IMG/VR virus record: IMGVR_UViG_3300048597_000634 | Location: 141,545 to 205,544 of that record | Strand: one strand, 5' to 3' | Length of the DNA: 64,000 bases | Part shown: piece after piece, positions 3,789 to 58,152 of the stretch | How positions within the stretch are numbered: position 1 is the stretch's first letter | Layout: the number at the start of each line of letters is the position of its first letter | Position numbers and translations under genes: made by a program | Notes under the pieces: model-generated | The model's input: only the letters and a program-made list of their open reading frames with translations | Told to the model about the DNA's origin: nothing | The model's database searches: none

Positions 3789-5823
3789 TTAGTGAGCCCA
3801 GACGGGCGCTATAGAATAAGAACAGGCACCTTTGATCTCAGAGCCTAGAGCCTCAAACTGTTTGGTTTGCACGGACTCCATTATCTGCTTAATGGTCTCT
3901 GCTATTTCTATAGCTAGCTTATCGGATGTGAAGGCTAATTCTGTGTATAGCCCATCGTCATTCACTTTGCTGTTGTCCCAGTCTATGGTAGATGTACCAG
4001 GAGAGTATATCAAGATTTCCATTTGATGTTGCGCCCCGCCCGATTCCGACGGGGCTCCTTAGCTTACACTAAGGGTCAGACTATATCATCACCAGCTTAT
4101 GCGCTGGTGCAACCTGTTTCGAGACCTCTTGGTCCCTACTCCCTTGCGGGATAGTCGTTGAACCTTGGTCATGTGGTATGACCCTTGGCTGCTGATTGCC
4201 CTGCTTTAGCGTGGGGGTTCCCAGCAATTAAGGTTGTTTACCCACGACAAAATCTATCGTGCACCTGTCCAATCAGTTGAATATCCTCCTGTGTAAACGT
4301 TGAATGGTTATCAATCCACCGTTGGATTAATATCATGGATTCTTTGGTCTGGGTTGCTGAAATGCTTTGGCATTGTTGTTATCGTAGAGCCGTTTAAACT
4401 CTACTTCCGCTGGTCACCCAACGGGTCAGGTCATATCATCGACTCTAGGAGTCGCCGGGCGCTCTTGGATAATATTATAGTTTGGGTCCATATTATCTGA
4501 CCGTCACACCTTCCTAGGGACTAAAACCCATCCTAGGCTTGGCTCGGTATTGCCTGGCTAGACACCAGGGGTCCACCGAATTCACCCGGTTATCACTTAA
4601 TCATCACTGATTAAGGCCACCCATTAGTTGATGGCGCAATTCACAGCAGCCCGCACAGCGGAATCTCCTTCCTTGCCGCCAGACCTTTCTTCAGCTCGAT
4701 GTTGTTATCGTCAGGCTCTTTATCCTGACTTCTATTGGTTTCCCAATAGTCCAGACTATTTCTTAAGCGTTGCCATTTTGACAACCCTTTCGGGCGCTCG
4801 TGGGGATTATTATTGTTGGAACTCAAATCCCTAGTCGTTGAACCTGACGTAGAACCAAAGTCCTCTACGTATTGGCTTAGCGTTACCATAACCTTCTTAT
4901 AAGCGTTAGGCTTTCACTAAATTCACCCGATTTAAGGTAGGCTAACTATTCACTTTACCCACCGGTGCCGGCCTGTCAACGGGACTATACAAAAGCCCCT
5001 GGCGGCGGCTAAAGCACCATAATTCTCCGCCCAATCATAATACCCAGCGTAAGTTTCGCGATGGTTTTTTACCCAGGACTCAGCGACGTCTAGTTTGACA
5101 TGATTACGCTCACTGATTGACTGGGGTGTGCTTAAGTAAAGCATCAATTGCCCCCGGCTTTCACCGAGGATTAGACTATACCTTTACAATCATTGATTGC
5201 ACTCGCCGTGTTACCCAACCTTAGGGTTGAGTCTCAGAGTCACCATAGTGTCGGCACCTTAGGTTATCGTCAGTCGTTGAACCATTCGCGCCGCTTTCAC
5301 GACGCCCTGGCTGCTGATTGGCATCGACGTTAGTCGGAAGCTTTCCAGCAATTGAGCGAGTTTGTTTTCGCCAACTCTACTTAGCGAAATTGAGCGTCTT
5401 AGCCGTGTCACGGGGTTTACGCTTTTCTCCAGGCTGTAGTTTTCGTACTATTTCATCCCACTCGCTTTCAGGTTTTCCTTCTACTAAGTGAGGATGGGTG
5501 CAGTTAGAACAAGTCCAAGAATGGAGGTCCCCTCTAGGGTTTGTATAGGTAGTTCCGTCGGGCAATGCGAGCTTTTTAGGTAATAATTGCGCTTGAGTCA
5601 TGGCCGGGTCTTTACTAAGCACTGTAGCTACTAAAATTTCCTGGGATGAGTAGTCTAAAGATACTATACTTTTCCCCGACCCATTACCACAGGTAAAACC
5701 ATTACGAGGGTTACTCATAAAGGTAATAACCTGTTCTTCGGTTTGAGGCTCGCTTAATACTACGCCGCCGCCCGTGGGGGCTGGGCGGGTAGTCAGTCTT
5801 CGTTTACGTTTCGGTTGGTTCAT
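3789..5823 (-). CDS. polA: family A DNA polymerase, C-terminal (fingers/palm) subunit; 5 exons: 5823-5383, 5144-4957, 4696-4631, 4370-4256, 4019-3789; 346 aa spliced
   Basis: Joined exons total 1041 nt in frame. They restore motif A (SLDYSSQE), motif B (RDTAKTLNFA|MLY), AVNCAI|QS and motif C (QVHD|EILI). Confidence 0.92.
4020..4255 (-). ncRNA. group I intron 4 of polA (236 nt, ORF-less), inserted within motif C (HD|E)
   Basis: P1 CACGAU/GUCGUG; P10 AGAUUUU/GAAAUCU; P AAUUGCUGGGAA; Q AAUCAGCAGCC; R GUUCAACGACUA; S AUGAUAUAGUCU. Confidence 0.93.
4371..4630 (-). ncRNA. group I intron 3 of polA (260 nt, ORF-less)
   Basis: P1 GCCAU/GUGGC; P3 CCGGGUG/CGCCCGG; P4 GAAUUCGGU/AAUACCGAGCC; variant P7 GGUCA/UGACC; terminal G at 4371. 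Confidence 0.88.
4697..4956 (-). ncRNA. group I intron 2 of polA (260 nt, ORF-less)
   Basis: P1 GGUGGGU/GCCUACC with U.G at the splice site; R GUUCAACGACUA; S AAGAAAUAGUCU; terminal G at 4697. Confidence 0.9.
5145..5382 (-). ncRNA. group I intron 1 of polA (238 nt, ORF-less)
   Basis: 5' exon ends in U and the intron ends in G. P1 UUUCGCU/GGCGAAA; P AAUUGCUGGAAA; Q AAUCAGCAGCC; R GUUCAACGACUG; S AAGGUAUAGUCU. Confidence 0.92.
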
Positions 5824-9491: not shown

Positions 9492-9752
9492 ATGGCCAGT
9501 TTATTAGAGCTGTATAGGCTGCAAAATACACTTACGGGCGAGCAAATTAAGAGTTTGTATGAGGGTGAGTTTGACACTAACGCTTATACAGATGCTGAGA
9601 AGATTAAGCTGGCTTCTACTTTAGTAGTAGTACCTGTTCCCGTTACATCTACTTCTCCTGGACAAGTAGGAAATATTGCAGTTGACACGGATTACATCTA
9701 TGTTTGTGTTGCGTCTAATACATGGAAGAGAAATGTATTAACTGATTGGTAG
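9492..9752 (+). CDS. small protein with a tail-fibre/virion-type C-terminal module
   Basis: PVTSTSPGQVGNIAVDTDYIYVCVASNTWKR resembles a module common in phage fibre proteins. One of very few credible plus-strand genes. Confidence 0.55.
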   Translation: MASLLELYRLQNTLTGEQIKSLYEGEFDTNAYTDAEKIKLASTLVVVPVPVTSTSPGQVGNIAVDTDYIYVCVASNTWKRNVLTDW

Positions 9753-9951: not shown

Positions 9952-12222
9952 TTACTCGTAGTCCCTAAATGCTACACCAATAGGGAATCGTGGCAGACCA
10001 TCATCTGTATAACCATGGTGCTTAATGGTTATTAAGGTTTGTGATTCCGGCGGGTTGTCATAAACTTCCTGCTTCTGTGCTACCGTGCCTTGCATTTTAG
10101 CCTTAAACACCAGACCAATACACGTCGAACACTCAGCTATTAGGTCTTCAACGCCCCGCTGCCCTAACAAGAACCTCTCAAAGACGAACTCATTGGTATC
10201 GTACTCCTTAACCTTCAGTAGGTTGCTAGACCGCTGCCCTTGGTCGTAAGTGCCATTAAGGAGACGGATCATTACACCCTCGTAACCTTCGCTAACGTAG
10301 TGCATGTGAAGCTCCATCACTTCCTCCTTGTTGTCGCAGGTAGAGGTAGGTAGGGCTTTAACATGCTGCCAACTAATAGTGGATGTCAGGCGGCGCACCT
10401 CCAACTCCCGCTCTAGCTGCTTCTGATCGTTGACAATGTCGTAGACCCAGAACTCTAGCTGTAAGGATTGCTCTTGTTGTTTCTTAACAGCAGAGACAAT
10501 CTCTTGGAAGGTTAGCTCTCTAGTGAATATCTCCCCGTCGAGGATGACAGGCTGGGTGAGCTTCTCTTCTAGTTCCTTTTTGATGTGCCCTAGCGTAGTG
10601 TACTTTTTGCCGGTGCGGGACAGGAAAGTAACGGTCTTACCGTCGAACACAGCCAGGGCTCTACAATTGTGAATAACAACGCCGTTAGCGACGTAGTTAT
10701 GATTGTCTTCTACCTCTAGGTCGTACTTAGTGTATGGGGCAGAGCTACGCTTAGCTTTAGTTTTATGAAACTTACTCCAAGCGAACTCGTCTTTTGCGGC
10801 TTGCACGTAGTCTTCCGTAGGGAAGTAATATTTGTACTCTACTCCTTTACAATGGCACTTCCGTAAACTGTTAAGTAAATAAAGAGTGTCTTTAGTGTTG
10901 AACTGTAGGAATATTCCAGAGCAATTAGTGGTGTCGACACGTTTATCCCGTATTTCTGTAGGCGTGCAATGCCACTTTTTCTGAAAGTATTCGACAAACA
11001 CTTTTATCTGGTCGAGAGAGTGCTTATGTGTGGATATACTTAGCACCGGTGTGTTAGGGTTTCCGTTGTTAAAGCTTATACTTCCGTCATCTGCAATCCA
11101 TAGACTTAGAGCTTCTGGGCTCATGTATTTACACATGTTATCGTATGTGATGTGCTTCCTGTGCCCTAGCCGCTTACAGTGCCCTGTAAAGTAGATTAAC
11201 TCGATAGGAAAGTCTGTCTTACTTAATGCGACACTATCAAACCGATAGCCTTTAGACCCATAACCTGTTGTGTATTCGGTACACCTACCATCTAAGTTTA
11301 GAGTCTTAACCTTAAAATCGAATAGCTCTTTATTGGTATGACTAAAAGCTAATCTGTAACTGGTACCGCTACCTCTTTTTTCTATGTTCATTATGCTATC
11401 CCCCAGTAAGGTGCCAAAGACAAGAGACGTTCTATACTCGGAGAAGCAATTTACGTAGATTAAATCTTCCTTCTCATTAAGGTCGCGAGCTTCTTTCCAG
11501 CCTTGGTTGGTAAAGTATTTATGGTTGGCAGTTGTCTTCAATCGTGTACCTGTAGGCAGAGTAACATCTAACCAATCTTTGTACTTAGAGCTTCCGTTAT
11601 TAAACCAATTTGTTATGGGCTTGTACTCAAAGACCTTTTTGGCTTCGTTGTAAGAGAGCACTTCCACCTTCATTTTGGTCTCTACTATCTCTTCAATGCT
11701 TATTAGTCCTTTATTAGTAGAGACTAGAGTTTTACCGTAGACGCAGCCGTCCAATTTGGGCTGCACAAGGCAGCGGTACTTAACTTTATTCCACTTCACG
11801 GACTGGGCTAGCATTGGCTTCCGCATTCCGTTAGCGTCAGTGTTAAAGGTAGGTAGAGCGGCTTCTAAAGCATTCTTTAAATGCGAATAGAGAGTATTCT
11901 CGTAGGAGAAAGCTGACGCGGCTGTTCCTTCTACCCAAGAGATGCCTAGGTCTTCTAAAGACTTGTAGCCCTCGTCTTGCTTCTTCTTCCAGTCGCTGCG
12001 GGCTTCAGACTCGGCTTGTTGTTGGGGTGTCGTGGCGTTACTTCTGTTTAAGTTCTTACCTTCGCTAATGGTCTTGATGTTAACGAGGGGTTTGTCGGTG
12101 CCGTACTGTCCTGAGGTCTTGATGACCTGATACTCGTCGGAGCCGAGGACAGCTTCAGTCTCGATCTCCCAATAGGCTATAGATAGATTCTTTGTGCGCT
12201 TGTAAAGTATTGGTAGTTTCAT
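9952..12222 (-). CDS. ATP-dependent DNA ligase precursor (about 396 aa mature) containing an intein
   Basis: QPKLDG|C...HN|CRA, ILDGEIF, FWVYD, EGVMIR, LLKVK, and C-terminal PRFP. Confidence 0.92.
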   Translation of the reverse strand: MKLPILYKRTKNLSIAYWEIETEAVLGSDEYQVIKTSGQYGTDKPLVNIKTISEGKNLNRSNATTPQQQAESEARSDWKKKQDEGYKSLEDLGISWVEGTAASAFSYENTLYSHLKNALEAALPTFNTDANGMRKPMLAQSVKWNKVKYRCLVQPKLDGCVYGKTLVSTNKGLISIEEIVETKMKVEVLSYNEAKKVFEYKPITNWFNNGSSKYKDWLDVTLPTGTRLKTTANHKYFTNQGWKEARDLNEKEDLIYVNCFSEYRTSLVFGTLLGDSIMNIEKRGSGTSYRLAFSHTNKELFDFKVKTLNLDGRCTEYTTGYGSKGYRFDSVALSKTDFPIELIYFTGHCKRLGHRKHITYDNMCKYMSPEALSLWIADDGSISFNNGNPNTPVLSISTHKHSLDQIKVFVEYFQKKWHCTPTEIRDKRVDTTNCSGIFLQFNTKDTLYLLNSLRKCHCKGVEYKYYFPTEDYVQAAKDEFAWSKFHKTKAKRSSAPYTKYDLEVEDNHNYVANGVVIHNCRALAVFDGKTVTFLSRTGKKYTTLGHIKKELEEKLTQPVILDGEIFTRELTFQEIVSAVKKQQEQSLQLEFWVYDIVNDQKQLERELEVRRLTSTISWQHVKALPTSTCDNKEEVMELHMHYVSEGYEGVMIRLLNGTYDQGQRSSNLLKVKEYDTNEFVFERFLLGQRGVEDLIAECSTCIGLVFKAKMQGTVAQKQEVYDNPPESQTLITIKHHGYTDDGLPRFPIGVAFRDYE
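10666..11745 (-). mobile_element. intein (360 aa) with LAGLIDADG homing endonuclease
   Basis: Begins CVYGKT and has block B TTANHKY. LAGLIDADG-like motifs FGTLLGDS and LWIADDGS. Ends YDLEVEDNHNYVANGVVIHN, followed by Cys+1. Confidence 0.93.
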
Positions 12223-37110: not shown

Positions 37111-37752
37111 TTAGAACATAGATGGAACCATTTGCCTGGCATCATAGGCACGTAGCTTATGTACCTCGGCCTCTAGTTCGGTTATGCGAGTATAGGCTAC
37201 TTCTAGTTCTTTCTCAGTCATGTTTAGCTTTACCTGCACAGACTCTAGCGCCTCTTTGAGTTGTTCTTTGGTAGGGCCCGGCGTCTTCTTAGGTTCTTGT
37301 TCTTCCCAATAAAGGTCTAACGTTAGCGTGTCGGGGTCACAACCCTGTGCTACTTTCTCTTTGTACCAGCGTATGATTCGCAGGGTTCTGGCAAGCCTCA
37401 TACTATTAGCTAATGTTTTCTCATTAGATGTGTCTTGCATGCCTAGCTTAAGAACGATATCCCAATTCTCCGCTAGGGTGATGTAGTCATATGCATATGT
37501 CTTTCTTACTCCACTAACCCCGCTTTTAACGTAATCATCAAATGAAGTAAAGGTCCCTAAGTCTGTGGTTACAGGATTTTTTGTGCTGGCGCCTGCCTCT
37601 CTTAACTTTGTCCTAATAGCTATTAGAGCGTCACCCGCTGCTTTTAGCGCCGCTATAGCTTCTATACGTTTTAATTGAGACTCTCGAAACTTAGCGTCGT
37701 GTTCGCTAACCATAGTGCCGACCAGTAGATTTTCTTGTGATATACTTAACAT
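37111..37752 (-). CDS. paralog family A member 3
   Basis: AYDYITLAENWDIVLKL...RTLRIIRWYK.K...G.DPDTLTLDLYW...GP.K is nearly identical to the motifs in 28930. Confidence 0.75.
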   Translation of the reverse strand: MLSISQENLLVGTMVSEHDAKFRESQLKRIEAIAALKAAGDALIAIRTKLREAGASTKNPVTTDLGTFTSFDDYVKSGVSGVRKTYAYDYITLAENWDIVLKLGMQDTSNEKTLANSMRLARTLRIIRWYKEKVAQGCDPDTLTLDLYWEEQEPKKTPGPTKEQLKEALESVQVKLNMTEKELEVAYTRITELEAEVHKLRAYDARQMVPSMF

Positions 37753-37774: not shown

Positions 37775-37888
37775 TCACGTTCGCAACTCCGAACGTGACT
37801 AATAGACTAACACACTGCCATGTAAAATGGCGTTAAAAATATGCATATTTTTAGACTATAAAAGCGGGCTGCTAACTAAGTCCGCTTT
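37775..37888 (-). promoter_or_regulatory. terminator hairpin, -10 boxes, 20-bp palindrome and 9-bp inverted repeat upstream of 37752
   Basis: Hairpin AAAGCGG...CCGCTTT at 37861-37888; TAAAAATATGCATATTTTTA at 37834-37853; minus-strand TGTTAGTCT at 37812-37804; IR at 37775-37783/37790-37798. Confidence 0.55.
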
Positions 37889-49009: not shown

Positions 49010-50361
49010 CTAAGAATTGGGTTTAAAGCCTAGCCCTTCAGGGCTACTTTTATCTGCGTCTTTATGTGATAAGATGAGAGGATGTTAGTAAGAGAAGCCA
49101 AGCTATTGAATGGAGCGCAGGGGCAATATATCGCCCTTGATGAAGCCATTCGCACCGCACAGTTCATTCGGAACAAGTGCGTTAAATATTGGATGGACAA
49201 CACAAGTGTGGGTAAAGCAACTCTGTATGTCCACTCTAAAGACCTAGCTAAAGAGTTTGAGTTTGCTAAAAAGCTTAACTCTACTGCTCGACAAGCTAGT
49301 GCTGAACGCGCTTGGACTTCTATCTCTAACTTTTATAGCCGTTGCCGCAAGGGTGAAAAGAAGAAAGGCTACCCTCAGTTTAAGAAGCATTGTCGCTCTG
49401 TGGAGTACAAGCAGTCAGGGTGGAAGCTATCAGGTGATTGTATGCAAATCACATTCACTGATGGATTTAACGCAGGGACTTTCTCTATATTCTGTAATGC
49501 AGAGACAAGGGAAGACTTGCATACACTAAAGATTAACAGGGTACGTGTAGTCTGTCGGGCTGATGGCTACTATGCCCAGTTTCTATTCGATGCCGACCGC
49601 AAGGAACAAGGAGTGTATACAGGTAACGTTATTGGATTGGACTTAGGGTTGAAATACTTCTACAAAGACCAAAACGATAACGCTGTTGTTTATCCCCAGT
49701 ATCTACGGAAAGCAGAGAAGCGTCTTAAGCGACAACAGCGGCGGTTAAGTAGGAAGTTTAAGAAAGGGCTTAAGCCCCAATCTAATAACTACCACAAGCA
49801 AAGAAAACGACTAGGTAAAACCCATCTTAAAGTCCAACGCCAACGTAAAGACTGGAGCATTAAGCAAGCTCGGTGCGTGGTAATGTCTAACGACATTGTG
49901 GTGTACGAAGACTTAAAGATAGGGAACATGGTTAAGAATCATTCCTTGGCTAAGTCAATCTCCGATGCTAGTTGGTATCAATTCACTCAATGGTTAGACT
50001 ACTACGGCAAGATTTGGGACAAGGTAGTTGTATCGGTAAATCCCGCATACACTAGCCAAGATTGTCCCAATTGTGGTCACAGAGTCAAAAAGACATTAAG
50101 TACCAGGACACATTCTTGTCCCAGTTGTGGATTTGAAGCCTGTCGCGATACTGTGGCGGCAATGAACATCCTTAAAAAGGGCATGAAGTTGTTAGGTATT
50201 GAGTGGCAAAACAGTACGCAAGGGCATTGCGAAACTGGGGAGAAATCCCGAACGACTGAGGAGATAATCGCCTCTGCTATAGATAGGCAACTTGAAATAG
50301 TAAGTGATGTCGATGAATCAGTAACAAGAATCCCCGCCCTAAAGGGCGAGGAGCATGTCAA
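49010..50361 (+). mobile_element. IS200/IS605-family (IS1341/IS891-like) tnpB-only element
   Basis: Preceded by TTAC (49006-49009); left hairpin TAGCCCTTCAGGGCTA; right hairpin followed by terminal TCAA. Confidence 0.8.
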
Positions 50362-50386
50362 GCTTCCAGTCTTTGTGTGCGGCTAA
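49082..50386 (+). CDS. tnpB: RNA-guided endonuclease TnpB (catalytic motifs intact)
   Basis: GLDLG (RuvC-I), YEDL (RuvC-II), CPNC..CPSC zinc finger, RDTVAA (RuvC-III). Confidence 0.93.
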   Translation: MLVREAKLLNGAQGQYIALDEAIRTAQFIRNKCVKYWMDNTSVGKATLYVHSKDLAKEFEFAKKLNSTARQASAERAWTSISNFYSRCRKGEKKKGYPQFKKHCRSVEYKQSGWKLSGDCMQITFTDGFNAGTFSIFCNAETREDLHTLKINRVRVVCRADGYYAQFLFDADRKEQGVYTGNVIGLDLGLKYFYKDQNDNAVVYPQYLRKAEKRLKRQQRRLSRKFKKGLKPQSNNYHKQRKRLGKTHLKVQRQRKDWSIKQARCVVMSNDIVVYEDLKIGNMVKNHSLAKSISDASWYQFTQWLDYYGKIWDKVVVSVNPAYTSQDCPNCGHRVKKTLSTRTHSCPSCGFEACRDTVAAMNILKKGMKLLGIEWQNSTQGHCETGEKSRTTEEIIASAIDRQLEIVSDVDESVTRIPALKGEEHVKLPVFVCG

Positions 50387-52321: not shown

Positions 52322-52608
52322 TTGTCTAATGGGAGGATTCCTTCCCTGTTGAGATCGTTAATATTTAATCGGCCGTACATAGCATTAATACGGTAGGCAA
52401 CGTTATTCATCACTTGGTCGCCCATAGCGACTGCAGAGCCCACACAAATCTTTTGCTCTGCCTTGTGGAGCCTAGTGGTCTTATGGCAGAGGAACGGCTC
52501 GTCTTTGTAGAGGATGCTGTGGGCTATTTCTTGTTTGCGTTCTCGGCTTAGTGTCTTAAGGAAGACAGAGCCCTCACGAAACGGACAGTTACGGCAGGGT
52601 TGTTGCAT
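52276..52608 (-). CDS. Cys/His zinc-binding hypothetical protein (DUF6283-like)
   Basis: PCRNCPFR...FLCHKT...CVGS. Confidence 0.55.
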   Translation of the reverse strand: MQQPCRNCPFREGSVFLKTLSRERKQEIAHSILYKDEPFLCHKTTRLHKAEQKICVGSAVAMGDQVMNNVAYRINAMYGRLNINDLNREGILPLDKWLITTQAPAPTTFE

Positions 52609-53314
52609 CGTTAATCTCCTTTAAGATCACCTCCCGTTTTTCTGCATCAAGGGGGTCAAGGATGAGCAATTCTTTTAATAACGCTAGTATCTTAGACTGT
52701 AGTTTTAGCAAGGTTAGCATCTTAGGCGCGGCAGCTATTAACCTAGCATTGGCCGCTGCCTCTTCATCATCAATATGATAACTACCATTGATGCCTACTG
52801 AGATGCTAGTAGAGCACGTAGCTACAGTGACTTCTACTCCGTCTTTAGTGGTAGCTATTACAGTGGGGATATGGGTTCCGTTATGAAATCGCCAGGCGCC
52901 GGCGGTGTGTTGTTTATTAGTCATTGGTTGGTGGGTTTAAGCGTGAGTCACGGCTATCTAAACACCAAAGTAGTTGGTCTTTATTTTCTTGGCACCACCA
53001 GCCCCACAATTCATCCTTATAGAAACTTCGGTTGGTGGGTGACATCAAAGGACTAAACACTTCTAGCTCTTTGTCTTGCACTTTGACAACAATAGCTTCA
53101 TAGCTCTGCTCAAGGTATTGATTGTCTTCGCTAGTTACTTGTACAGACTCATCGCCTAGCGAGATAGTGTAATCAGTGCCTATTGGTATCTGCTCAATTT
53201 GATAAACCTCGCAGTGGTCGCCCACGCGCGGGCGGCAGTTACCTGTGACTACATGTTTCTTAGGTACCATTAGCTAATCCTTTTGATTAAGTTGTTAGTT
53301 TGTTCTGACGCCCA

Positions 53315-54067
53315 CTAAATACAAGACCCGAATAACTTATTAGCCACAGCATATAATTTGTTAATTACACCCATGTCTTCTGCGTACTCCAAGACCTTCT
53401 TGTTTTCGTTCTTGGCGCGGGCGGATAAGTCAACATGGTGGATGTAGCGGTACTCTTTGTACAGATAATTCCAGAGCGAGGAGTAGGACTCGCCGGTGGA
53501 ATAGGAATAGCCACGGACTAATTCGTTAATAGCACTACGAATAGACTTAGGCGGTACTTCTTCTACTACTGGCGGCAATGCGCGGAGCTCTTCAGACACT
53601 TTGGCGAATCGGTCTTCAATCTTACCAAGACGACTATCGTGCTGCTGCAGTTTCTCAGCCTGTTCTCGCTGTTGTTTTTCTACTGCAATCATAGCTTCGG
53701 CGTGCATCTTTAACAGCTCACCTGGAGTTAGCTCTTTGATGCTATAGGAGCCGGTCTTGCGGATAGAAGGTAGGACTTCAGAGGTCACCCATTTTTTAAA
53801 TGGTTTAGCTATCGGCTTTCGGCAACCCAGCACTAACGAGTATAATCCCGACTCTGATATTAGCCACTTGGACTTAATGCGTTCTATTTCAGCAGTACGG
53901 ATTGAATCCGTACTAACTTTCTCATCGTCGTCAAGCCGCTTAATCGCATCACTTACGTCTAGTTCTAGTACGTGACATGTTTCGCTTGCTACGAACCAAG
54001 GTTCTCCATCGATGTTAATTACGTTGATAGGGTTGTTGTTGAATTGAAATACAGTCAATTCATTCAT
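53315..54067 (-). CDS. BRO-N domain antirepressor-like protein
   Basis: FQFN...IDGEPWFVA...ISESGLYSLV...AKPFKKWVTSEVLPSIRKTGSY. Confidence 0.9.
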   Translation of the reverse strand: MNELTVFQFNNNPINVINIDGEPWFVASETCHVLELDVSDAIKRLDDDEKVSTDSIRTAEIERIKSKWLISESGLYSLVLGCRKPIAKPFKKWVTSEVLPSIRKTGSYSIKELTPGELLKMHAEAMIAVEKQQREQAEKLQQHDSRLGKIEDRFAKVSEELRALPPVVEEVPPKSIRSAINELVRGYSYSTGESYSSLWNYLYKEYRYIHHVDLSARAKNENKKVLEYAEDMGVINKLYAVANKLFGSCI

Positions 54068-54438
54068 TAGCTAATCCTCTTAATAATATGGTCAATTTGA
54101 TTGTTCAATGCGCCACCTTGTATCTCACCCAGGCGGATAGCCAAGAGTAACTCAAACATCTCTGGAGCGGCGGCGCATAACTTAGCGTTAGCCAAAGCTT
54201 CTTGTTTAGACATCTGATAGGAACCAGTCTGTCCATTACTAACGCCAGGCGCACAGCTTGCTATTGCCACGTAGTATTCTTTTTGTTTATCGGGGGTCAG
54301 AGCGGCGCGTACTTCAGGGATGTATTTGCCATGTACGGCTAACCAATGACCTTGGGTATAGGTTGGGCTGAAGTCTACTTGGGACTTAGAGGAACGGTCT
54401 TTACAGATTAATTTCATAGGTTTAATGGAGATAATAAG

Positions 54439-54810
54439 GAAGCCCATTAGTCGTGGAGATGACTAACAGGCTTCTTTTTCGGAGCAAATACACAGAAGGT
54501 GTTGCTACTAGCCTAGTGCAAAATGAAGCCCACCAGTCGTAGAGGTGACCAGTAGGCTTCTGCACAAAGGAGAAGTTTATGGAACATGCTGCTGCTAACA
54601 CCAGCTTAATGCAAAATGAAGCCCACTAGTCGTAGAGATTACTAATGAGCTTCTCCATGAGGCAAAATATGCATATTTCTAGCTTAATGTAAAACAACGC
54701 CTGCTAACATGCCACGAGCTAGCAAGCGTCGGTCAACTTCTAAGAAAACAACTATATTCAGTTTAGCTGAAAACAAAGCCCACCAGCTTGTAGGAGCACT
54801 GGCGGGCAAT
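54439..54810 (-). repeat. tandem array of hairpin / TTTT / TAnnCT units with variable inserts (putative sRNA array)
   Basis: Three 36-nt imperfect repeats GAAGCCCAYYAGTCGTRGAGRTKACYARYRRGCTTC at 54439, 54525 and 54618, plus two diverged hairpins near 54698 and 54778. Confidence 0.75.
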
Positions 54811-55499
54811 TCACAGTCCATCAGAACGAAACACTACTTACACTTTAACTGTATTCTTCGGACCATGGGTAATGACAAAGCCACCGTTCTCATGCAAAGT
54901 TAGCACGCCCATGCCGTCGATGACCATCCGACCGTCTTCCAGCTCAGTAACTTCAGGACAGTTACCATTGGCGTAGCCCGGTACGACGTTAAACGTTAGC
55001 TCTTCAGTCTCCTGGTCTAGCTTCATGGTCATGCTAGCCGGACTGGTGTGAGGTAGGTTAATAGGCGCAGGCAATGGTGCCTTAGACTTGGCAATCATTT
55101 CTTTATATTCTGGGGAGTCGTCTTCAAAATTAGATGCGCTAGCAAGGGGTTTTGTATTGAGGTCAGTCATAGCTTATTTAGTTAGTGTTCAATTTCAAAG
55201 AAATCTACTAGACCTAGGGAAGACATAAGGAAGTCGTAGCATTTATCTTTTATCTTCTTAATGTCCCATAGGTGGTCTACATCTAATACTAGCTTAGGGT
55301 CGTCTTGGTTTGCCCAATAGCCGCGGATATAGCTTGGTGGCAGTTTTGCTTCTCTTAGATAATGTAGTGCTTCGTCCCATCTAAGTCGGTCGGTCTTACG
55401 CCCTATGCTTAAATGTTTAATCTCAGCGGTAAGCATTGTCGGTAACCCATCCTGAAAAGAGGTTAATGAATAAATAACTCCACTGAATACTAGCTTAAG

Positions 55500-56885: not shown

Positions 56886-57500
56886 TTATGTAGCGGTTTC
56901 TAGGATGGTGCGTTCGGTGTCTAGGTTGCGGTTAATGGCGCGACTAGACTCGAACTTATCAGAGTATCGTGCGTAGAGCTTAAGAAGATTTTTACGAAGG
57001 ATGGGGTTAAGGTCTGGGTAAGTACCAGCGAATAGTATGTGAGCATACCAAAGGAAGTCACCGAGTTCTTCTTGTATGTTCACAACATCTAGTGGAGCAC
57101 CGTCGTATAGAGCGGTGTACAGTGCTTCGACCAGTTCTACCGCTTCGGTAGCCATACCGAGGATACAATGAATGATTTCGGGGGTGCATACGTGGGTAGG
57201 CCATTGCCCGGCGACTGGTGGTGCGGCTACCATAGAGTCGCTGGTCTCTTTAGATACCCATTGGGCGGCTTGTAGTTCCCGGTTGACCTCGGCTACGTTC
57301 TTACCGTAGAAGAGAGCCTTCTTGATTTTGTCTAGGGTATTGCCATAGTAGATGAAGTCTGACATTGCCTTAAGGGCAAGGGGGTAGTCAAGGTCGTCGC
57401 CGTAGAATTCGTGGGATAGGGTGACCTCAGCGCCGGCGCAATACTCAGCCCAGGTAAGGTCTTCGCCGGCTTTGCATTTTTCGATGATGTGGTTAGGCAT
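56886..57500 (-). CDS. MazG-like nucleotide pyrophosphohydrolase
   Basis: LGMATEAVELVEA...IQEELGDFLWY...NLLKL.ARY. Confidence 0.78.
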   Translation of the reverse strand: MPNHIIEKCKAGEDLTWAEYCAGAEVTLSHEFYGDDLDYPLALKAMSDFIYYGNTLDKIKKALFYGKNVAEVNRELQAAQWVSKETSDSMVAAPPVAGQWPTHVCTPEIIHCILGMATEAVELVEALYTALYDGAPLDVVNIQEELGDFLWYAHILFAGTYPDLNPILRKNLLKLYARYSDKFESSRAINRNLDTERTILETAT

Positions 57501-58152
57501 GTTTGTTAAATAACTTACGGGTGCAGTCGAACTTCCAGTATTTGAAGATTTCTTCTCCTAGCTTAGACGGTAAGGTTAATAGAAAACTGACTACTGGTGG
57601 AATTTGTTTAATGCTGAAGCCTTTAGCTAGTAGAGTTCGGACTACGGTTAGTCGAATTAGCTTAGCCGTATCGGTAGCGCCGCCGCCGAATTTGGCCCAG
57701 GATTTAACGTGAGCGTGCTTCACCTTGCCAGGATACATCTGGCCAATAGCATTAGCACAGAGGCTATTTTGCTGGGGAGTGACGTACCAGAGGTTCTTGG
57801 GGTCATTATTCTTGCGGTTGCCATCTAGATGATGAACCTCAAGGATGCCCTTAACCACACGGTATTTACGGTCTGGTCGTTCCTTATAGCGTAGGAACCA
57901 AATGCCAGTGTAAAGGAAGAGGACGATTTGATGAACGCCTGCCACGTAACCGTGGTTAGTTGGATGGAAAACAAAGAAGCCGATGTCTTCGAGGATTTGT
58001 TTGAGTTCTGGGTTGTCTTCAAACTCAAGGACTAAGTAACCTTCGCGGTTAGTGAAGGTATCAGCCTGTTCTAAAAGAGAACGAGCCCCGTCGATTAACT
58101 GACGGAGCTCGCTCCTTTTAATGGAGTAAAAGTCTGCTCTCATAGTATTCAA
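57493..58152 (-). CDS. HNH endonuclease
   Basis: VHQIV...EVHHLDGNRKNNDPKNLWYVTPQQN. Confidence 0.8.
   Translation of the reverse strand: MNTMRADFYSIKRSELRQLIDGARSLLEQADTFTNREGYLVLEFEDNPELKQILEDIGFFVFHPTNHGYVAGVHQIVLFLYTGIWFLRYKERPDRKYRVVKGILEVHHLDGNRKNNDPKNLWYVTPQQNSLCANAIGQMYPGKVKHAHVKSWAKFGGGATDTAKLIRLTVVRTLLAKGFSIKQIPPVVSFLLTLPSKLGEEIFKYWKFDCTRKLFNKHA

What the first reader, a model, noticed from the sequence alone, without database searches (positions are those of the whole stretch)
54439..54835. Array of promoter / variable-segment / terminator units: candidate phage small-RNA cassette
Seen: five hairpins 80-93 bp apart, three of them 36-nt near-repeats. On the minus strand four are followed by TTTT-N4-TA(A/G)(G/A)CT (TAAACT, TAAGCT, TAAGCT, TAGGCT), a -10-like box, and then about 25-45 nt of unique sequence running into the next hairpin. 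Each unit could therefore make a 60-80 nt RNA with a unique 5' seed and a conserved terminator. Two seeds are antisense to convincing translation starts (plus strand AAAGGAGAAGTTTATGGAA near 54566 and GAGGCAAAATATGCAT near 54659), and a third contains anti-SD CUCC. Inference: a multiplexed antisense/guide RNA array silencing host or phage mRNAs, CRISPR-like in layout but with each unit separately transcribed.
Basis: partly seen in the sequence, partly recalled or inferred. Interest (0 to 1): 0.8.

Follow-up and report, generated by a model that had tools for sequence, protein, structure and literature searches.

The report
Five tandem terminator hairpins in phage
A 420-base gap between two genes of an uncultured large phage holds five related RNA hairpins that look like a stack of transcription stop signals; the idea that they form a guide-RNA array has no evidence for it beyond the layout.

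Summary
Window 54418-54837 is an intergenic gap on the coding (minus) strand. It carries five hairpins of 10-14 bp, each followed by a U-rich tail. All five are homologous, not only three. The stems are kept by compensatory changes, and all wobble pairs are G-U on the minus strand, so the hairpins act in RNA. Four tails carry TTTT-N4-TARRCT, a motif found nowhere else in the 64 kb. The 27-42 nt segments between the modules are unrelated to one another.

The only relative found, from the same metagenome, is syntenic. It lacks the upstream orphan gene and has one short, plain terminator of the same family at this site, plus a second copy 8.5 kb away.

I found no target for any "seed" in the phage. 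TAAGCT is not enriched in this phage's intergenic DNA, whereas TATAAT is. The "translation starts" belong to 16- and 7-codon frames on the non-coding strand. No sequencing run was listed, so there is no RNA evidence.

Best reading: an amplified stack of intrinsic terminator modules at a gene-cassette junction in a hyperplastic region, comparable to PeSL cassettes of T4-like phages. Separately transcribed 60-80 nt RNAs remain possible (about 0.2). The array is rare but not categorically new.

The parts
54838..55170 (-). Upstream gene for a 110-aa orphan protein. Its stop codon lies 30 nt before H1. The gene is absent from the relative L030.
   Evidence: ORF list. No Pfam or PADLOC family. Only a self hit among 5.8 billion proteins. 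Missing in L030.
54778..54807 (-). H1: hairpin of 10 pairs with a 10-nt loop, followed by the tail TTTGTTTT.
   Evidence: -19.5 kcal/mol, z -4.0. Covariance model score 50.7 bits.
54760..54773 (-). Tail of H1: TTTT-N4-TAAACT. The box is at 54765-54760.
54732..54759 (-). Variable segment S1 (28 nt). It contains TATAGT.
   Evidence: no similarity to the other segments. No target.
54695..54731 (-). H2: hairpin of 14 pairs. It is the most diverged copy, and its stem is kept by compensatory changes.
   Evidence: -22.1 kcal/mol.
54681..54694 (-). Tail of H2: TTTT-N4-TAAGCT. It overlaps the only sigma-70-like match in the array, TTTACA-16-CATATT (9 of 12).
54654..54680 (-). Variable segment S2 (27 nt). 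It contains the 14-nt palindrome AAATATGCATATTT at 54665-54678.
54618..54653 (-). H3: hairpin of 13 pairs.
   Evidence: 64 bits; -17.6 kcal/mol.
54603..54616 (-). Tail of H3: TTTT-N4-TAAGCT.
54561..54602 (-). Variable segment S3 (42 nt). It contains CUUCUCCUUU, an anti-Shine-Dalgarno-like run. Its plus strand reads AAGGAG-N7-ATG and opens a 16-codon frame.
54525..54560 (-). H4: hairpin of 14 pairs. It is the copy closest to the single hairpin of the relative L030.
   Evidence: 65.1 bits; -25.4 kcal/mol.
54510..54523 (-). Tail of H4: TTTT-N4-TAGGCT.
54475..54509 (-). Variable segment S4 (35 nt). It ends in an A-run that gives H5 a T-run on the plus strand.
54439..54474 (-). H5: hairpin of 14 pairs. 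Its tail is CTTATTAT, with no TARRCT box. It lies 21 nt before the ATG at 54417.
   Evidence: terminator-like; -21.2 kcal/mol, z -6.7.
54067..54417 (-). Downstream gene of 116 aa, family PF27050 (Phage_P22_Y8K6). The public gene call starts at 54447, inside H5. Its ortholog in L030 follows that phage's single hairpin.

Best explanation
The array is a stack of five paralogous intrinsic (Rho-independent) terminator modules. It lies on the coding strand between an orphan gene cassette and the PF27050/Bro-N genes, in a hyperplastic accessory-gene region of a large uncultured phage that probably infects a cyanobacterium. Each module is a 10-14 bp RNA hairpin plus a U-rich tail and a short conserved extension. 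RNA polymerase arriving from the upstream genes would be stopped stepwise, so the array insulates the downstream genes from upstream transcription. It also gives the upstream mRNA a stable 3' end. The modules belong to a lineage-specific terminator family that also occurs as single, dispersed copies in the one known relative. The array most likely arose when the roughly 55-nt module was copied or recombined next to unrelated short sequences, in the same way that composite terminator/promoter cassettes (PeSLs) mark gene gain and loss in T4-like phages. Shown here: the hairpins, their strand, their covariation, their U-tails, their family relationship, and the link with a gene insertion/deletion difference from the relative. 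Inferred: termination itself, the insulating role, and the origin of the array.
For: Almost all ORFs of 150 aa or more are on the minus strand. The array fills the gap between two minus-strand genes. The minus-strand RNA folds far better than its shuffles (z -6.2), while the plus strand does so only weakly (z -2.3). Each hairpin folds at -17.6 to -25.4 kcal/mol and is followed by a U-rich tail. Across the six family copies, 96% of cells pair and 7 of 13 pairs show changes on both sides. There are 14 G-U cells against one A-C cell on this strand. The relative L030 is syntenic: 279-aa gene, T5orf172, DUF1653, 84-aa gene, hairpin, PF27050 gene. At this site it has one 10-bp hairpin with the tail CTTTTATTT, which is an ordinary terminator, and it lacks the 110-aa gene. 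A second family copy lies between two other L030 genes. In PeSL phage pairs, an ORFan flanked by cassettes in one phage corresponds to a single cassette in the other (PMC2839356). The variable segments have no targets better than chance.
Against: Five terminators in a row are redundant, yet every copy keeps a perfect stem, which suggests that each has a job of its own. The conserved block runs about 10 nt past the U-tract and ends in TARRCT, which a terminator does not need. Reading the sequence directly and post hoc, all four boxes are followed by a pyrimidine-A step at the 6th and 7th nucleotides, the usual spacing from a -10 box to a start site. Identity falls from about 85% to random at the module edges, which simple tandem duplication followed by drift does not explain. 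The downstream genes need a promoter, and I could not identify one. Termination was not measured.
Confidence: 0.5

Rival explanations
1. Each TARRCT box is a minimal -10 promoter. Units 1-4 would each give a 62-78 nt RNA made of a unique single-stranded 5' segment and the next hairpin as its terminator. These RNAs would pair with host or phage mRNAs, acting as sibling sRNAs with different seeds.
For: All four TTTT-N4-TARRCT matches in 64 kb lie in the array, and the box fits TAnnnT. A pyrimidine-A step follows each box at the 6th and 7th nucleotides (direct reading). The predicted RNAs have largely open 5' parts and a terminal hairpin. The segments between modules are unrelated while the modules are conserved. 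Hairpin loops and S3 carry CUCC/CUCU runs that could pair with Shine-Dalgarno sequences. All five hairpins are individually maintained. A precedent exists for tandem, separately transcribed sRNA units with their own promoter and terminator: NsiR1, with 12 copies in Nostoc (PMC9045159). The palindrome in S2 recurs after another terminator plus TAGTCT at 37.8 kb, which looks like a promoter/operator module.
Against: No target was found. The longest complementarity, and the duplex energies against 142 translation-start regions, are no better than for shuffled seeds. TAAGCT is not enriched in intergenic DNA (6 found, 6.1 expected), while TATAAT is (5 found, 0.9 expected). No -35 element lies at a proper spacing except in unit 2. 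Both family copies in the relative have plain U-rich tails. The orthologous copy reads CAGGCT where H4 reads TAGGCT. In known sibling sRNAs the RNA body is conserved, whereas here it is the part that differs. There is no Rfam match. No transcript data are available.
Confidence: 0.2
2. The modules are PeSL-like recombination linkers, or a small selfish repeat. Under this model they matter mainly as homologous sites for swapping gene cassettes, and the array is a pile of near-empty cassettes left by such exchanges. The array itself would have no RNA function beyond incidental termination.
For: The array lies exactly where synteny with the relative breaks. The 110-aa gene is present only in the window, and about 14 kb of extra genes sit between the PF27050 gene and the RNA ligase gene. 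The family has dispersed copies in L030. Module edges are sharp. PeSLs are composite terminator/promoter motifs of roughly 100 bp that flank ORFans and recombine (PMC2839356, PMC4122927).
Against: The window has no family copy outside the array, whereas PeSLs are numerous across hyperplastic regions. Recombination between linkers should leave one hybrid copy, not five copies separated by 27-42 nt. No clear -35/-10 pair is present. All copies keep perfect stems.
Confidence: 0.15
3. The array is a regulated barrier, or a protein-binding RNA. The hairpins, with their conserved CUCYAC loops, would be read by a phage antiterminator or another RNA-binding protein. That protein would time expression of the downstream genes, or the multi-hairpin RNA would titrate it.
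For: The loop sequence is similar in five of the seven family copies and across both phages. Every copy is maintained. Clusters of terminators serving as timing barriers are known from the lambda nin region (my own knowledge).
Against: No candidate protein was identified. The neighbouring genes have no RNA-binding families. Loop conservation may simply reflect recent common descent. H2 has a different loop.
Confidence: 0.07
4. The array is a degenerate CRISPR-like array that serves the TnpB/Cas12f-like gene at 49082-50386.
For: The hairpin repeats are 36 nt long and the intervening segments are 27-42 nt. The 434-aa protein matches PADLOC Cas12f/Cas14c models at 302 bits.
Against: The repeats are only 64-86% identical, and each ends in a terminator. 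The gene is 4 kb away, on the opposite strand, with unrelated genes in between. The relative has a TnpB only 27% identical and no array. No other cas gene was found, and no spacer match was found. The hairpin is absent from 185,579 reference genomes apart from one chance hit.
Confidence: 0.02

Closest known systems
Intrinsic (Rho-independent) transcription terminators, including tandem terminators such as rrnB T1-T2
   Same: A G+C-containing stem-loop is followed at once by a U-rich tract, on the coding strand just after a stop codon. The single ortholog in the relative is a textbook example.
   Different: Five homologous copies lie within 390 nt with unrelated 27-42 nt spacers. A conserved 10-nt extension ending in TARRCT follows the U-tract.
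PeSL composite promoter/terminator cassettes of T4-like phages (PMC2839356, PMC4122927)
   Same: Both are short conserved regulatory modules with a stem-loop terminator in a hyperplastic accessory-gene region. Both are associated with an ORFan that is present in one phage and replaced by a single module in its relative.
   Different: PeSLs have clear -35/-10 promoters with the stem-loop inside or overlapping them. They are many, are dispersed, and flank real ORFs. Here there is no convincing -35/-10 pair, the copies are clustered at one locus, and nothing codes between them. The phage is not shown to be T4-like.
NsiR1 of Nostoc/Anabaena: 12 tandem copies of a ~60-nt sRNA, each with its own promoter and terminator (PMC9045159)
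   Same: If the TARRCT boxes fire, the layout is the same: promoter, short RNA and terminator repeated head to tail with a period of tens of nucleotides. NsiR1 is cyanobacterial, and this phage's host may be too.
   Different: NsiR1 copies share the RNA body (seven are identical), and the DIF1 promoter motif is defined. Here the RNA bodies are unrelated and only the terminator and box are shared. No transcripts are known and there is no Rfam match.
CRISPR arrays with promoters inside each repeat (type II-C of Neisseria; my own knowledge)
   Same: Repeat and unique-segment alternation, with the idea that each unit is transcribed on its own.
   Different: The repeats here are diverged, each contains a terminator, no cas genes are adjacent, and no spacer matches were found.

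Membership tests
Intrinsic terminator | Stable stem-loop in the transcript of the coding strand | tested here: met
   Folding energies of -17.6 to -25.4 kcal/mol, z -4.0 to -6.7. G-U pairs occur only on the minus strand.
Intrinsic terminator | U-rich tract directly 3' of the stem | tested here: met
   All five tails have a TTTT run or at least 5 T in 9 nt. The tails of H3, H4 and H5 are shorter or more interrupted than a classical 7-8 U tract.
Intrinsic terminator | Causes transcript release | not testable with these tools
   No sequencing run was listed.
PeSL cassette | Sigma-70-like -35 and -10 boxes at about 17 nt spacing combined with the stem-loop | tested here: not met
   Only unit 2 gives a 9-of-12 match. 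The total number of promoter-like sites in the region (3) is no higher than in shuffles (3.5).
PeSL cassette | Many dispersed copies flanking ORFans across hyperplastic regions | tested here: not met
   The covariance model finds no copy in the window outside the array. The relative has two dispersed copies in 20 kb.
PeSL cassette | Association with gene insertions/deletions between close relatives | tested here: met
   The 110-aa gene and four extra modules are present in the window and absent in L030.
Tandem sibling sRNA array (NsiR1-like) | Own promoter in every unit | tested here: inconclusive
   A TAnnnT-type box occurs in 4 of 5 units, but the hexamer is not enriched in intergenic DNA and no -35 element was found.
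Tandem sibling sRNA array (NsiR1-like) | Conserved RNA body among copies | tested here: not met
   Segments S0-S4 show no significant pairwise similarity.
Tandem sibling sRNA array (NsiR1-like) | Discrete short transcripts | not testable with these tools
   No runs were listed.
CRISPR array | Near-identical repeats | tested here: not met
   Identity between copies is 64-86%.
CRISPR array | Adjacent cas genes | tested here: not met
   The flanking genes match no PADLOC or Pfam Cas family. The only Cas12f-like protein is a TnpB 4 kb away on the other strand.
Type III toxin-antitoxin (ToxI-like RNA repeats) | Tandem near-identical repeats of about 36 nt directly upstream of a ToxN-type endoribonuclease gene | tested here: not met
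   The downstream gene is PF27050 and has no PADLOC hit. The repeats are diverged and separated by unique DNA.
Known RNA families (Rfam 15) | Score at or above a family's gathering threshold | tested here: not met
   The best match is P37 at 20.6 bits against a threshold of 50.

The most novel reading that the evidence does not exclude
The array is a phage-borne battery of four separately transcribed 60-80 nt RNAs. They would share a terminator hairpin with an anti-Shine-Dalgarno-like loop but carry unrelated 5' seeds. That would make it a modular, Cas-free multi-guide cassette in which new seeds are slotted between copies of a promoter/terminator module to silence several host or phage mRNAs.
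Probability: 0.15. Interest if true: 0.75.

Novelty: new variant of a known kind. Interest (0 to 1): 0.35.

Why it matters
If the array is only a terminator stack, it is a clear and rare example of a phage amplifying a regulatory module at a gene-cassette junction. None was seen in 1.18 Mb of other viral DNA. It would also extend the PeSL idea of mobile regulatory cassettes beyond T4-like coliphages and vibriophages, to a phage that probably infects a cyanobacterium. If the units are transcribed on their own, it would be the first phage array of sRNAs with a shared scaffold and exchangeable seeds. That would be of interest for phage-host RNA warfare and as a natural design for multiplexed sRNA expression.

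Tried and rejected
Searches for relatives:
- DNA similarity to 50,697 phage records found nothing relevant.
- Pattern and protein scans of IMG/VR found only the source contig and one relative. A looser hairpin pattern gave about 100 chance hits that carried no family signal beyond the imposed stem.
- Scans of metagenome contigs by protein and by tandem-hairpin pattern found nothing.
- A scan of 185,579 reference genomes for the hairpin gave one chance hit. The hairpin is therefore not a host repeat or a CRISPR repeat in those genomes.
- Protein searches with both flanking genes and with the 84-aa neighbour found only the same two contigs. The second assembly record is the same contig.

Sequencing runs: none was listed for the locus.

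RNA families: Rfam gave no match at gathering or E-value thresholds, and no tRNA or tmRNA was found.

Coding readings rejected:
- The minus-strand 59-aa and 45-aa ORFs run through hairpins in different frames.
- The plus-strand frames are 16 and 7 codons.

Target searches: exact complementarity, blastn-short and RNAduplex against 142 start regions gave nothing above shuffles, except for the S2 palindrome, which is self-complementary DNA rather than a target.

Other rejected ideas:
- A replication origin or iterons: the cumulative GC skew is monotonic, and the G-U asymmetry points to RNA.
- An assembly artefact: the copies differ by 14-36%, so they could not have been collapsed or expanded in assembly.

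Full report
**Where the array lies.** The window is the last 64 kb of a 205.5-kb IMG/VR viral contig from metagenome 3300048597, which is 214 kb in the JGI record. Almost every ORF of 150 aa or more is on the minus strand. The reported interval fills the gap between two minus-strand genes. Upstream is a 110-aa orphan gene (54838..55170). Downstream is a 116-aa gene of family PF27050 (54067..54417). The neighbourhood is a run of small accessory genes: Bro-N, T5orf172, DUF1653, an HNH endonuclease and DUF6283. The window also holds an intein, three group I introns and a TnpB gene. The nearest atlas clusters of the TnpB are mostly cyanobacterial. That makes a cyanobacterial host plausible, but only as a lead. 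No cultured phage is close.

**The observation.** Read on the minus strand, the gap contains five hairpins:

| Hairpin | Coordinates | Pairs |
|---|---|---|
| H1 | 54807-54778 | 10 |
| H2 | 54731-54695 | 14 |
| H3 | 54653-54618 | 13 |
| H4 | 54560-54525 | 14 |
| H5 | 54474-54439 | 14 |

- Start-to-start spacing is 76, 78, 93 and 86 nt.
- Each hairpin folds at -17.6 to -25.4 kcal/mol, with z-scores of -4.0 to -6.7.
- The whole region folds much better as minus-strand RNA (z -6.2) than as plus-strand RNA (z -2.3).
- All five copies align over hairpin plus tail, not only the three near-repeats.
- On that alignment, 96% of cells pair and 7 of 13 pairs show changes on both sides. There are 14 G-U cells against a single A-C cell. 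This asymmetry shows that the element is selected as RNA on the minus strand, not as a DNA palindrome.
- Each hairpin is followed by a U-rich tail.
- Four tails read TTTT-N4-TARRCT. The window has four matches to this pattern and all are in the array, against 1.38 expected.
- A covariance model of the module finds nothing else in the window above 17 bits, while the five copies score 50-65 bits.
- In 1.18 Mb of unrelated viral loci, no same-strand cluster of three or more such hairpins occurs within 450 nt.

**Conserved modules and unrelated spacers.** The segments between modules are S1 to S4 (28, 27, 42 and 35 nt), and S0 lies before H1. They show no significant similarity to one another. The modules are 64-86% identical. 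The change from about 85% identity to random is abrupt at both edges of the module. Loop bases and the N4 bases of the tail are still similar among H2-H5, so the modules do not look like old copies held together by saturating selection. The roughly 55-nt module seems instead to have been copied next to unrelated short sequences.

**The one relative.** Protein searches of 5.8 billion sequences with three neighbouring genes found one related contig, from the same sample. Scans of IMG/VR, metagenome contigs and reference genomes added nothing. That contig (L030) is syntenic: 280-aa gene, T5orf172, 69-aa gene, 84-aa gene, then the PF27050 gene. Protein identity to the window is 58-86%.

L030 lacks the 110-aa gene. 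Its 71-nt gap holds one hairpin of 10 pairs with a 4-nt loop and the tail CTTTTATTT. This hairpin shares its outer stem and loop core with H4 and scores 37.6 bits with the model. It reads CAGGCT where H4 reads TAGGCT. A second family copy (22.8 bits, 12 pairs, tail TTTTTATT) lies 8.5 kb upstream in L030, between two other genes.

The family is therefore a lineage-specific terminator that normally occurs singly after genes. The window shows a local amplification, exactly at a point where gene content differs between the two phages. L030 also lacks about 14 kb that the window carries between the PF27050 gene and the RNA ligase gene. With only two genomes, I cannot say which state is ancestral.

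**Tests of the guide-RNA reading.**
- *Promoters.* TARRCT fits the minimal TAnnnT form of a -10 box. Reading the sequence directly and post hoc, each box is followed by a pyrimidine-A step at the 6th and 7th nucleotides, which is the right place for a start site. Against this, TAAGCT is no more frequent in this phage's intergenic DNA than in its coding DNA (6 against 6.1 expected). TATAAT is enriched five-fold. Only unit 2 has a sigma-70-like -35/-10 pair.
- *Targets.* Complementarity was tested in three ways: the longest exact match, blastn-short, and RNAduplex energies against 142 start regions. None is better than for shuffled seeds. The host is unknown, so host targets could not be tested.
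- *The "translation starts".* Both strings exist, but they open frames of 16 and 7 codons on the strand opposite to the genes. On the RNA strand, S3 instead reads as a CU-rich, anti-Shine-Dalgarno-like run. Similar CUCC/CUCU runs sit in the loops. This is compatible with an sRNA that binds ribosome-binding sites, but it is not evidence for one.
- *Transcripts.* No sequencing run was listed.
- *Known families.* Rfam gave no match.

**One observation favours regulatory DNA in unit 2.** S2 contains the 14-nt palindrome AAATATGCATATTT. This palindrome recurs at 37837-37850, again directly after a terminator hairpin, a T-run and TAGTCT. Its 10-nt core occurs three times in the window against 0.06 expected. 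This looks like an operator or promoter module, and it keeps the promoter idea alive for at least that unit.

**Best explanation.** I judge the array to be a stack of intrinsic terminator modules that insulates the downstream PF27050/Bro-N genes from upstream transcription. It would have been built by copying or recombination of a family module at a cassette junction (confidence about 0.5).

The closest described system is the PeSL cassette of T4-like phages. PeSLs are composite terminator/promoter motifs that flank ORFans. In a sister phage, an ORFan with its flanking cassettes is replaced by a single cassette (PMC2839356, PMC4122927). The array is not a PeSL member: it has no clear -35/-10 pair, no dispersed copies in the window, and nothing coding between the copies.

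Its points are the conserved box, the start-site spacing and the individual maintenance of five stems. NsiR1 is a real precedent for tandem promoter-sRNA-terminator units (PMC9045159), although in NsiR1 the RNA bodies are conserved.

A link to the TnpB/Cas12f-like gene is rejected. That gene is 4 kb away on the other strand. The relative has a TnpB only 27% identical and no array.

**Verdict.** The anatomy is confirmed and unusual. The guide-array function is unsupported but not excluded. TSS and 3'-end mapping in infected cells, together with single-module reporter assays, would settle the question.

Noticed in passing
window 4057-4284, 4732-4988, 5152-5392 (minus strand): Three group I introns lie within 1.4 kb (Rfam RF00028, 65-77 bits). 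I did not work out which gene they interrupt. The short ORFs between them may be exons or homing-endonuclease remnants.
   Followed up: partly
window 9952-12222 (minus strand): An ATP-dependent DNA ligase gene is interrupted by an intein that carries a LAGLIDADG endonuclease domain.
   Followed up: no
window 49082-50386 (plus strand); L030 18276-19583: A TnpB/Cas12f-like gene of 434 aa lies on the strand opposite to nearly all other genes. It scores 302 bits with PADLOC Cas12f/Cas14c models, and its nearest atlas clusters are mostly cyanobacterial. It is only 27% identical to the TnpB of the related phage, so the two are independent insertions.
   Followed up: partly
window 37489-37498, 37837-37850, 54665-54678: The palindrome ATATGCATAT occurs three times against 0.06 expected. 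The 14-nt form follows a terminator hairpin plus TA(A/G)(G/T)CT at two loci. It is a candidate operator for an unidentified phage regulator.
   Followed up: partly
L030 10316-11035: In the related phage, 720 nt without any called gene follow the PF27050 gene. The window has a Bro-N gene at the corresponding place.
   Followed up: no
window 52589-52924 and 54067-54417 (minus strand): Two paralogous PF27050 genes (37% identity, shared ANAxLxAAAP motif) flank a Bro-N gene, which suggests a local duplication.
   Followed up: no
window 58078-58115 (minus strand): A hairpin of 15 pairs with a CTTTT tail lies inside the HNH endonuclease ORF (57493..58152). It is the strongest non-array hit of the hairpin model, at 17 bits.
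   Followed up: no
window 55490-55499; L030 about 9620-9640: The intergenic string CTTAAGCTA(G/A)TATTCAGTGGA upstream of the 84-aa gene is conserved between the two phages. It shares TAAGCTAG with the array tails and may be a promoter (TAGTAT in the window, TAATAT in L030).
   Followed up: partly
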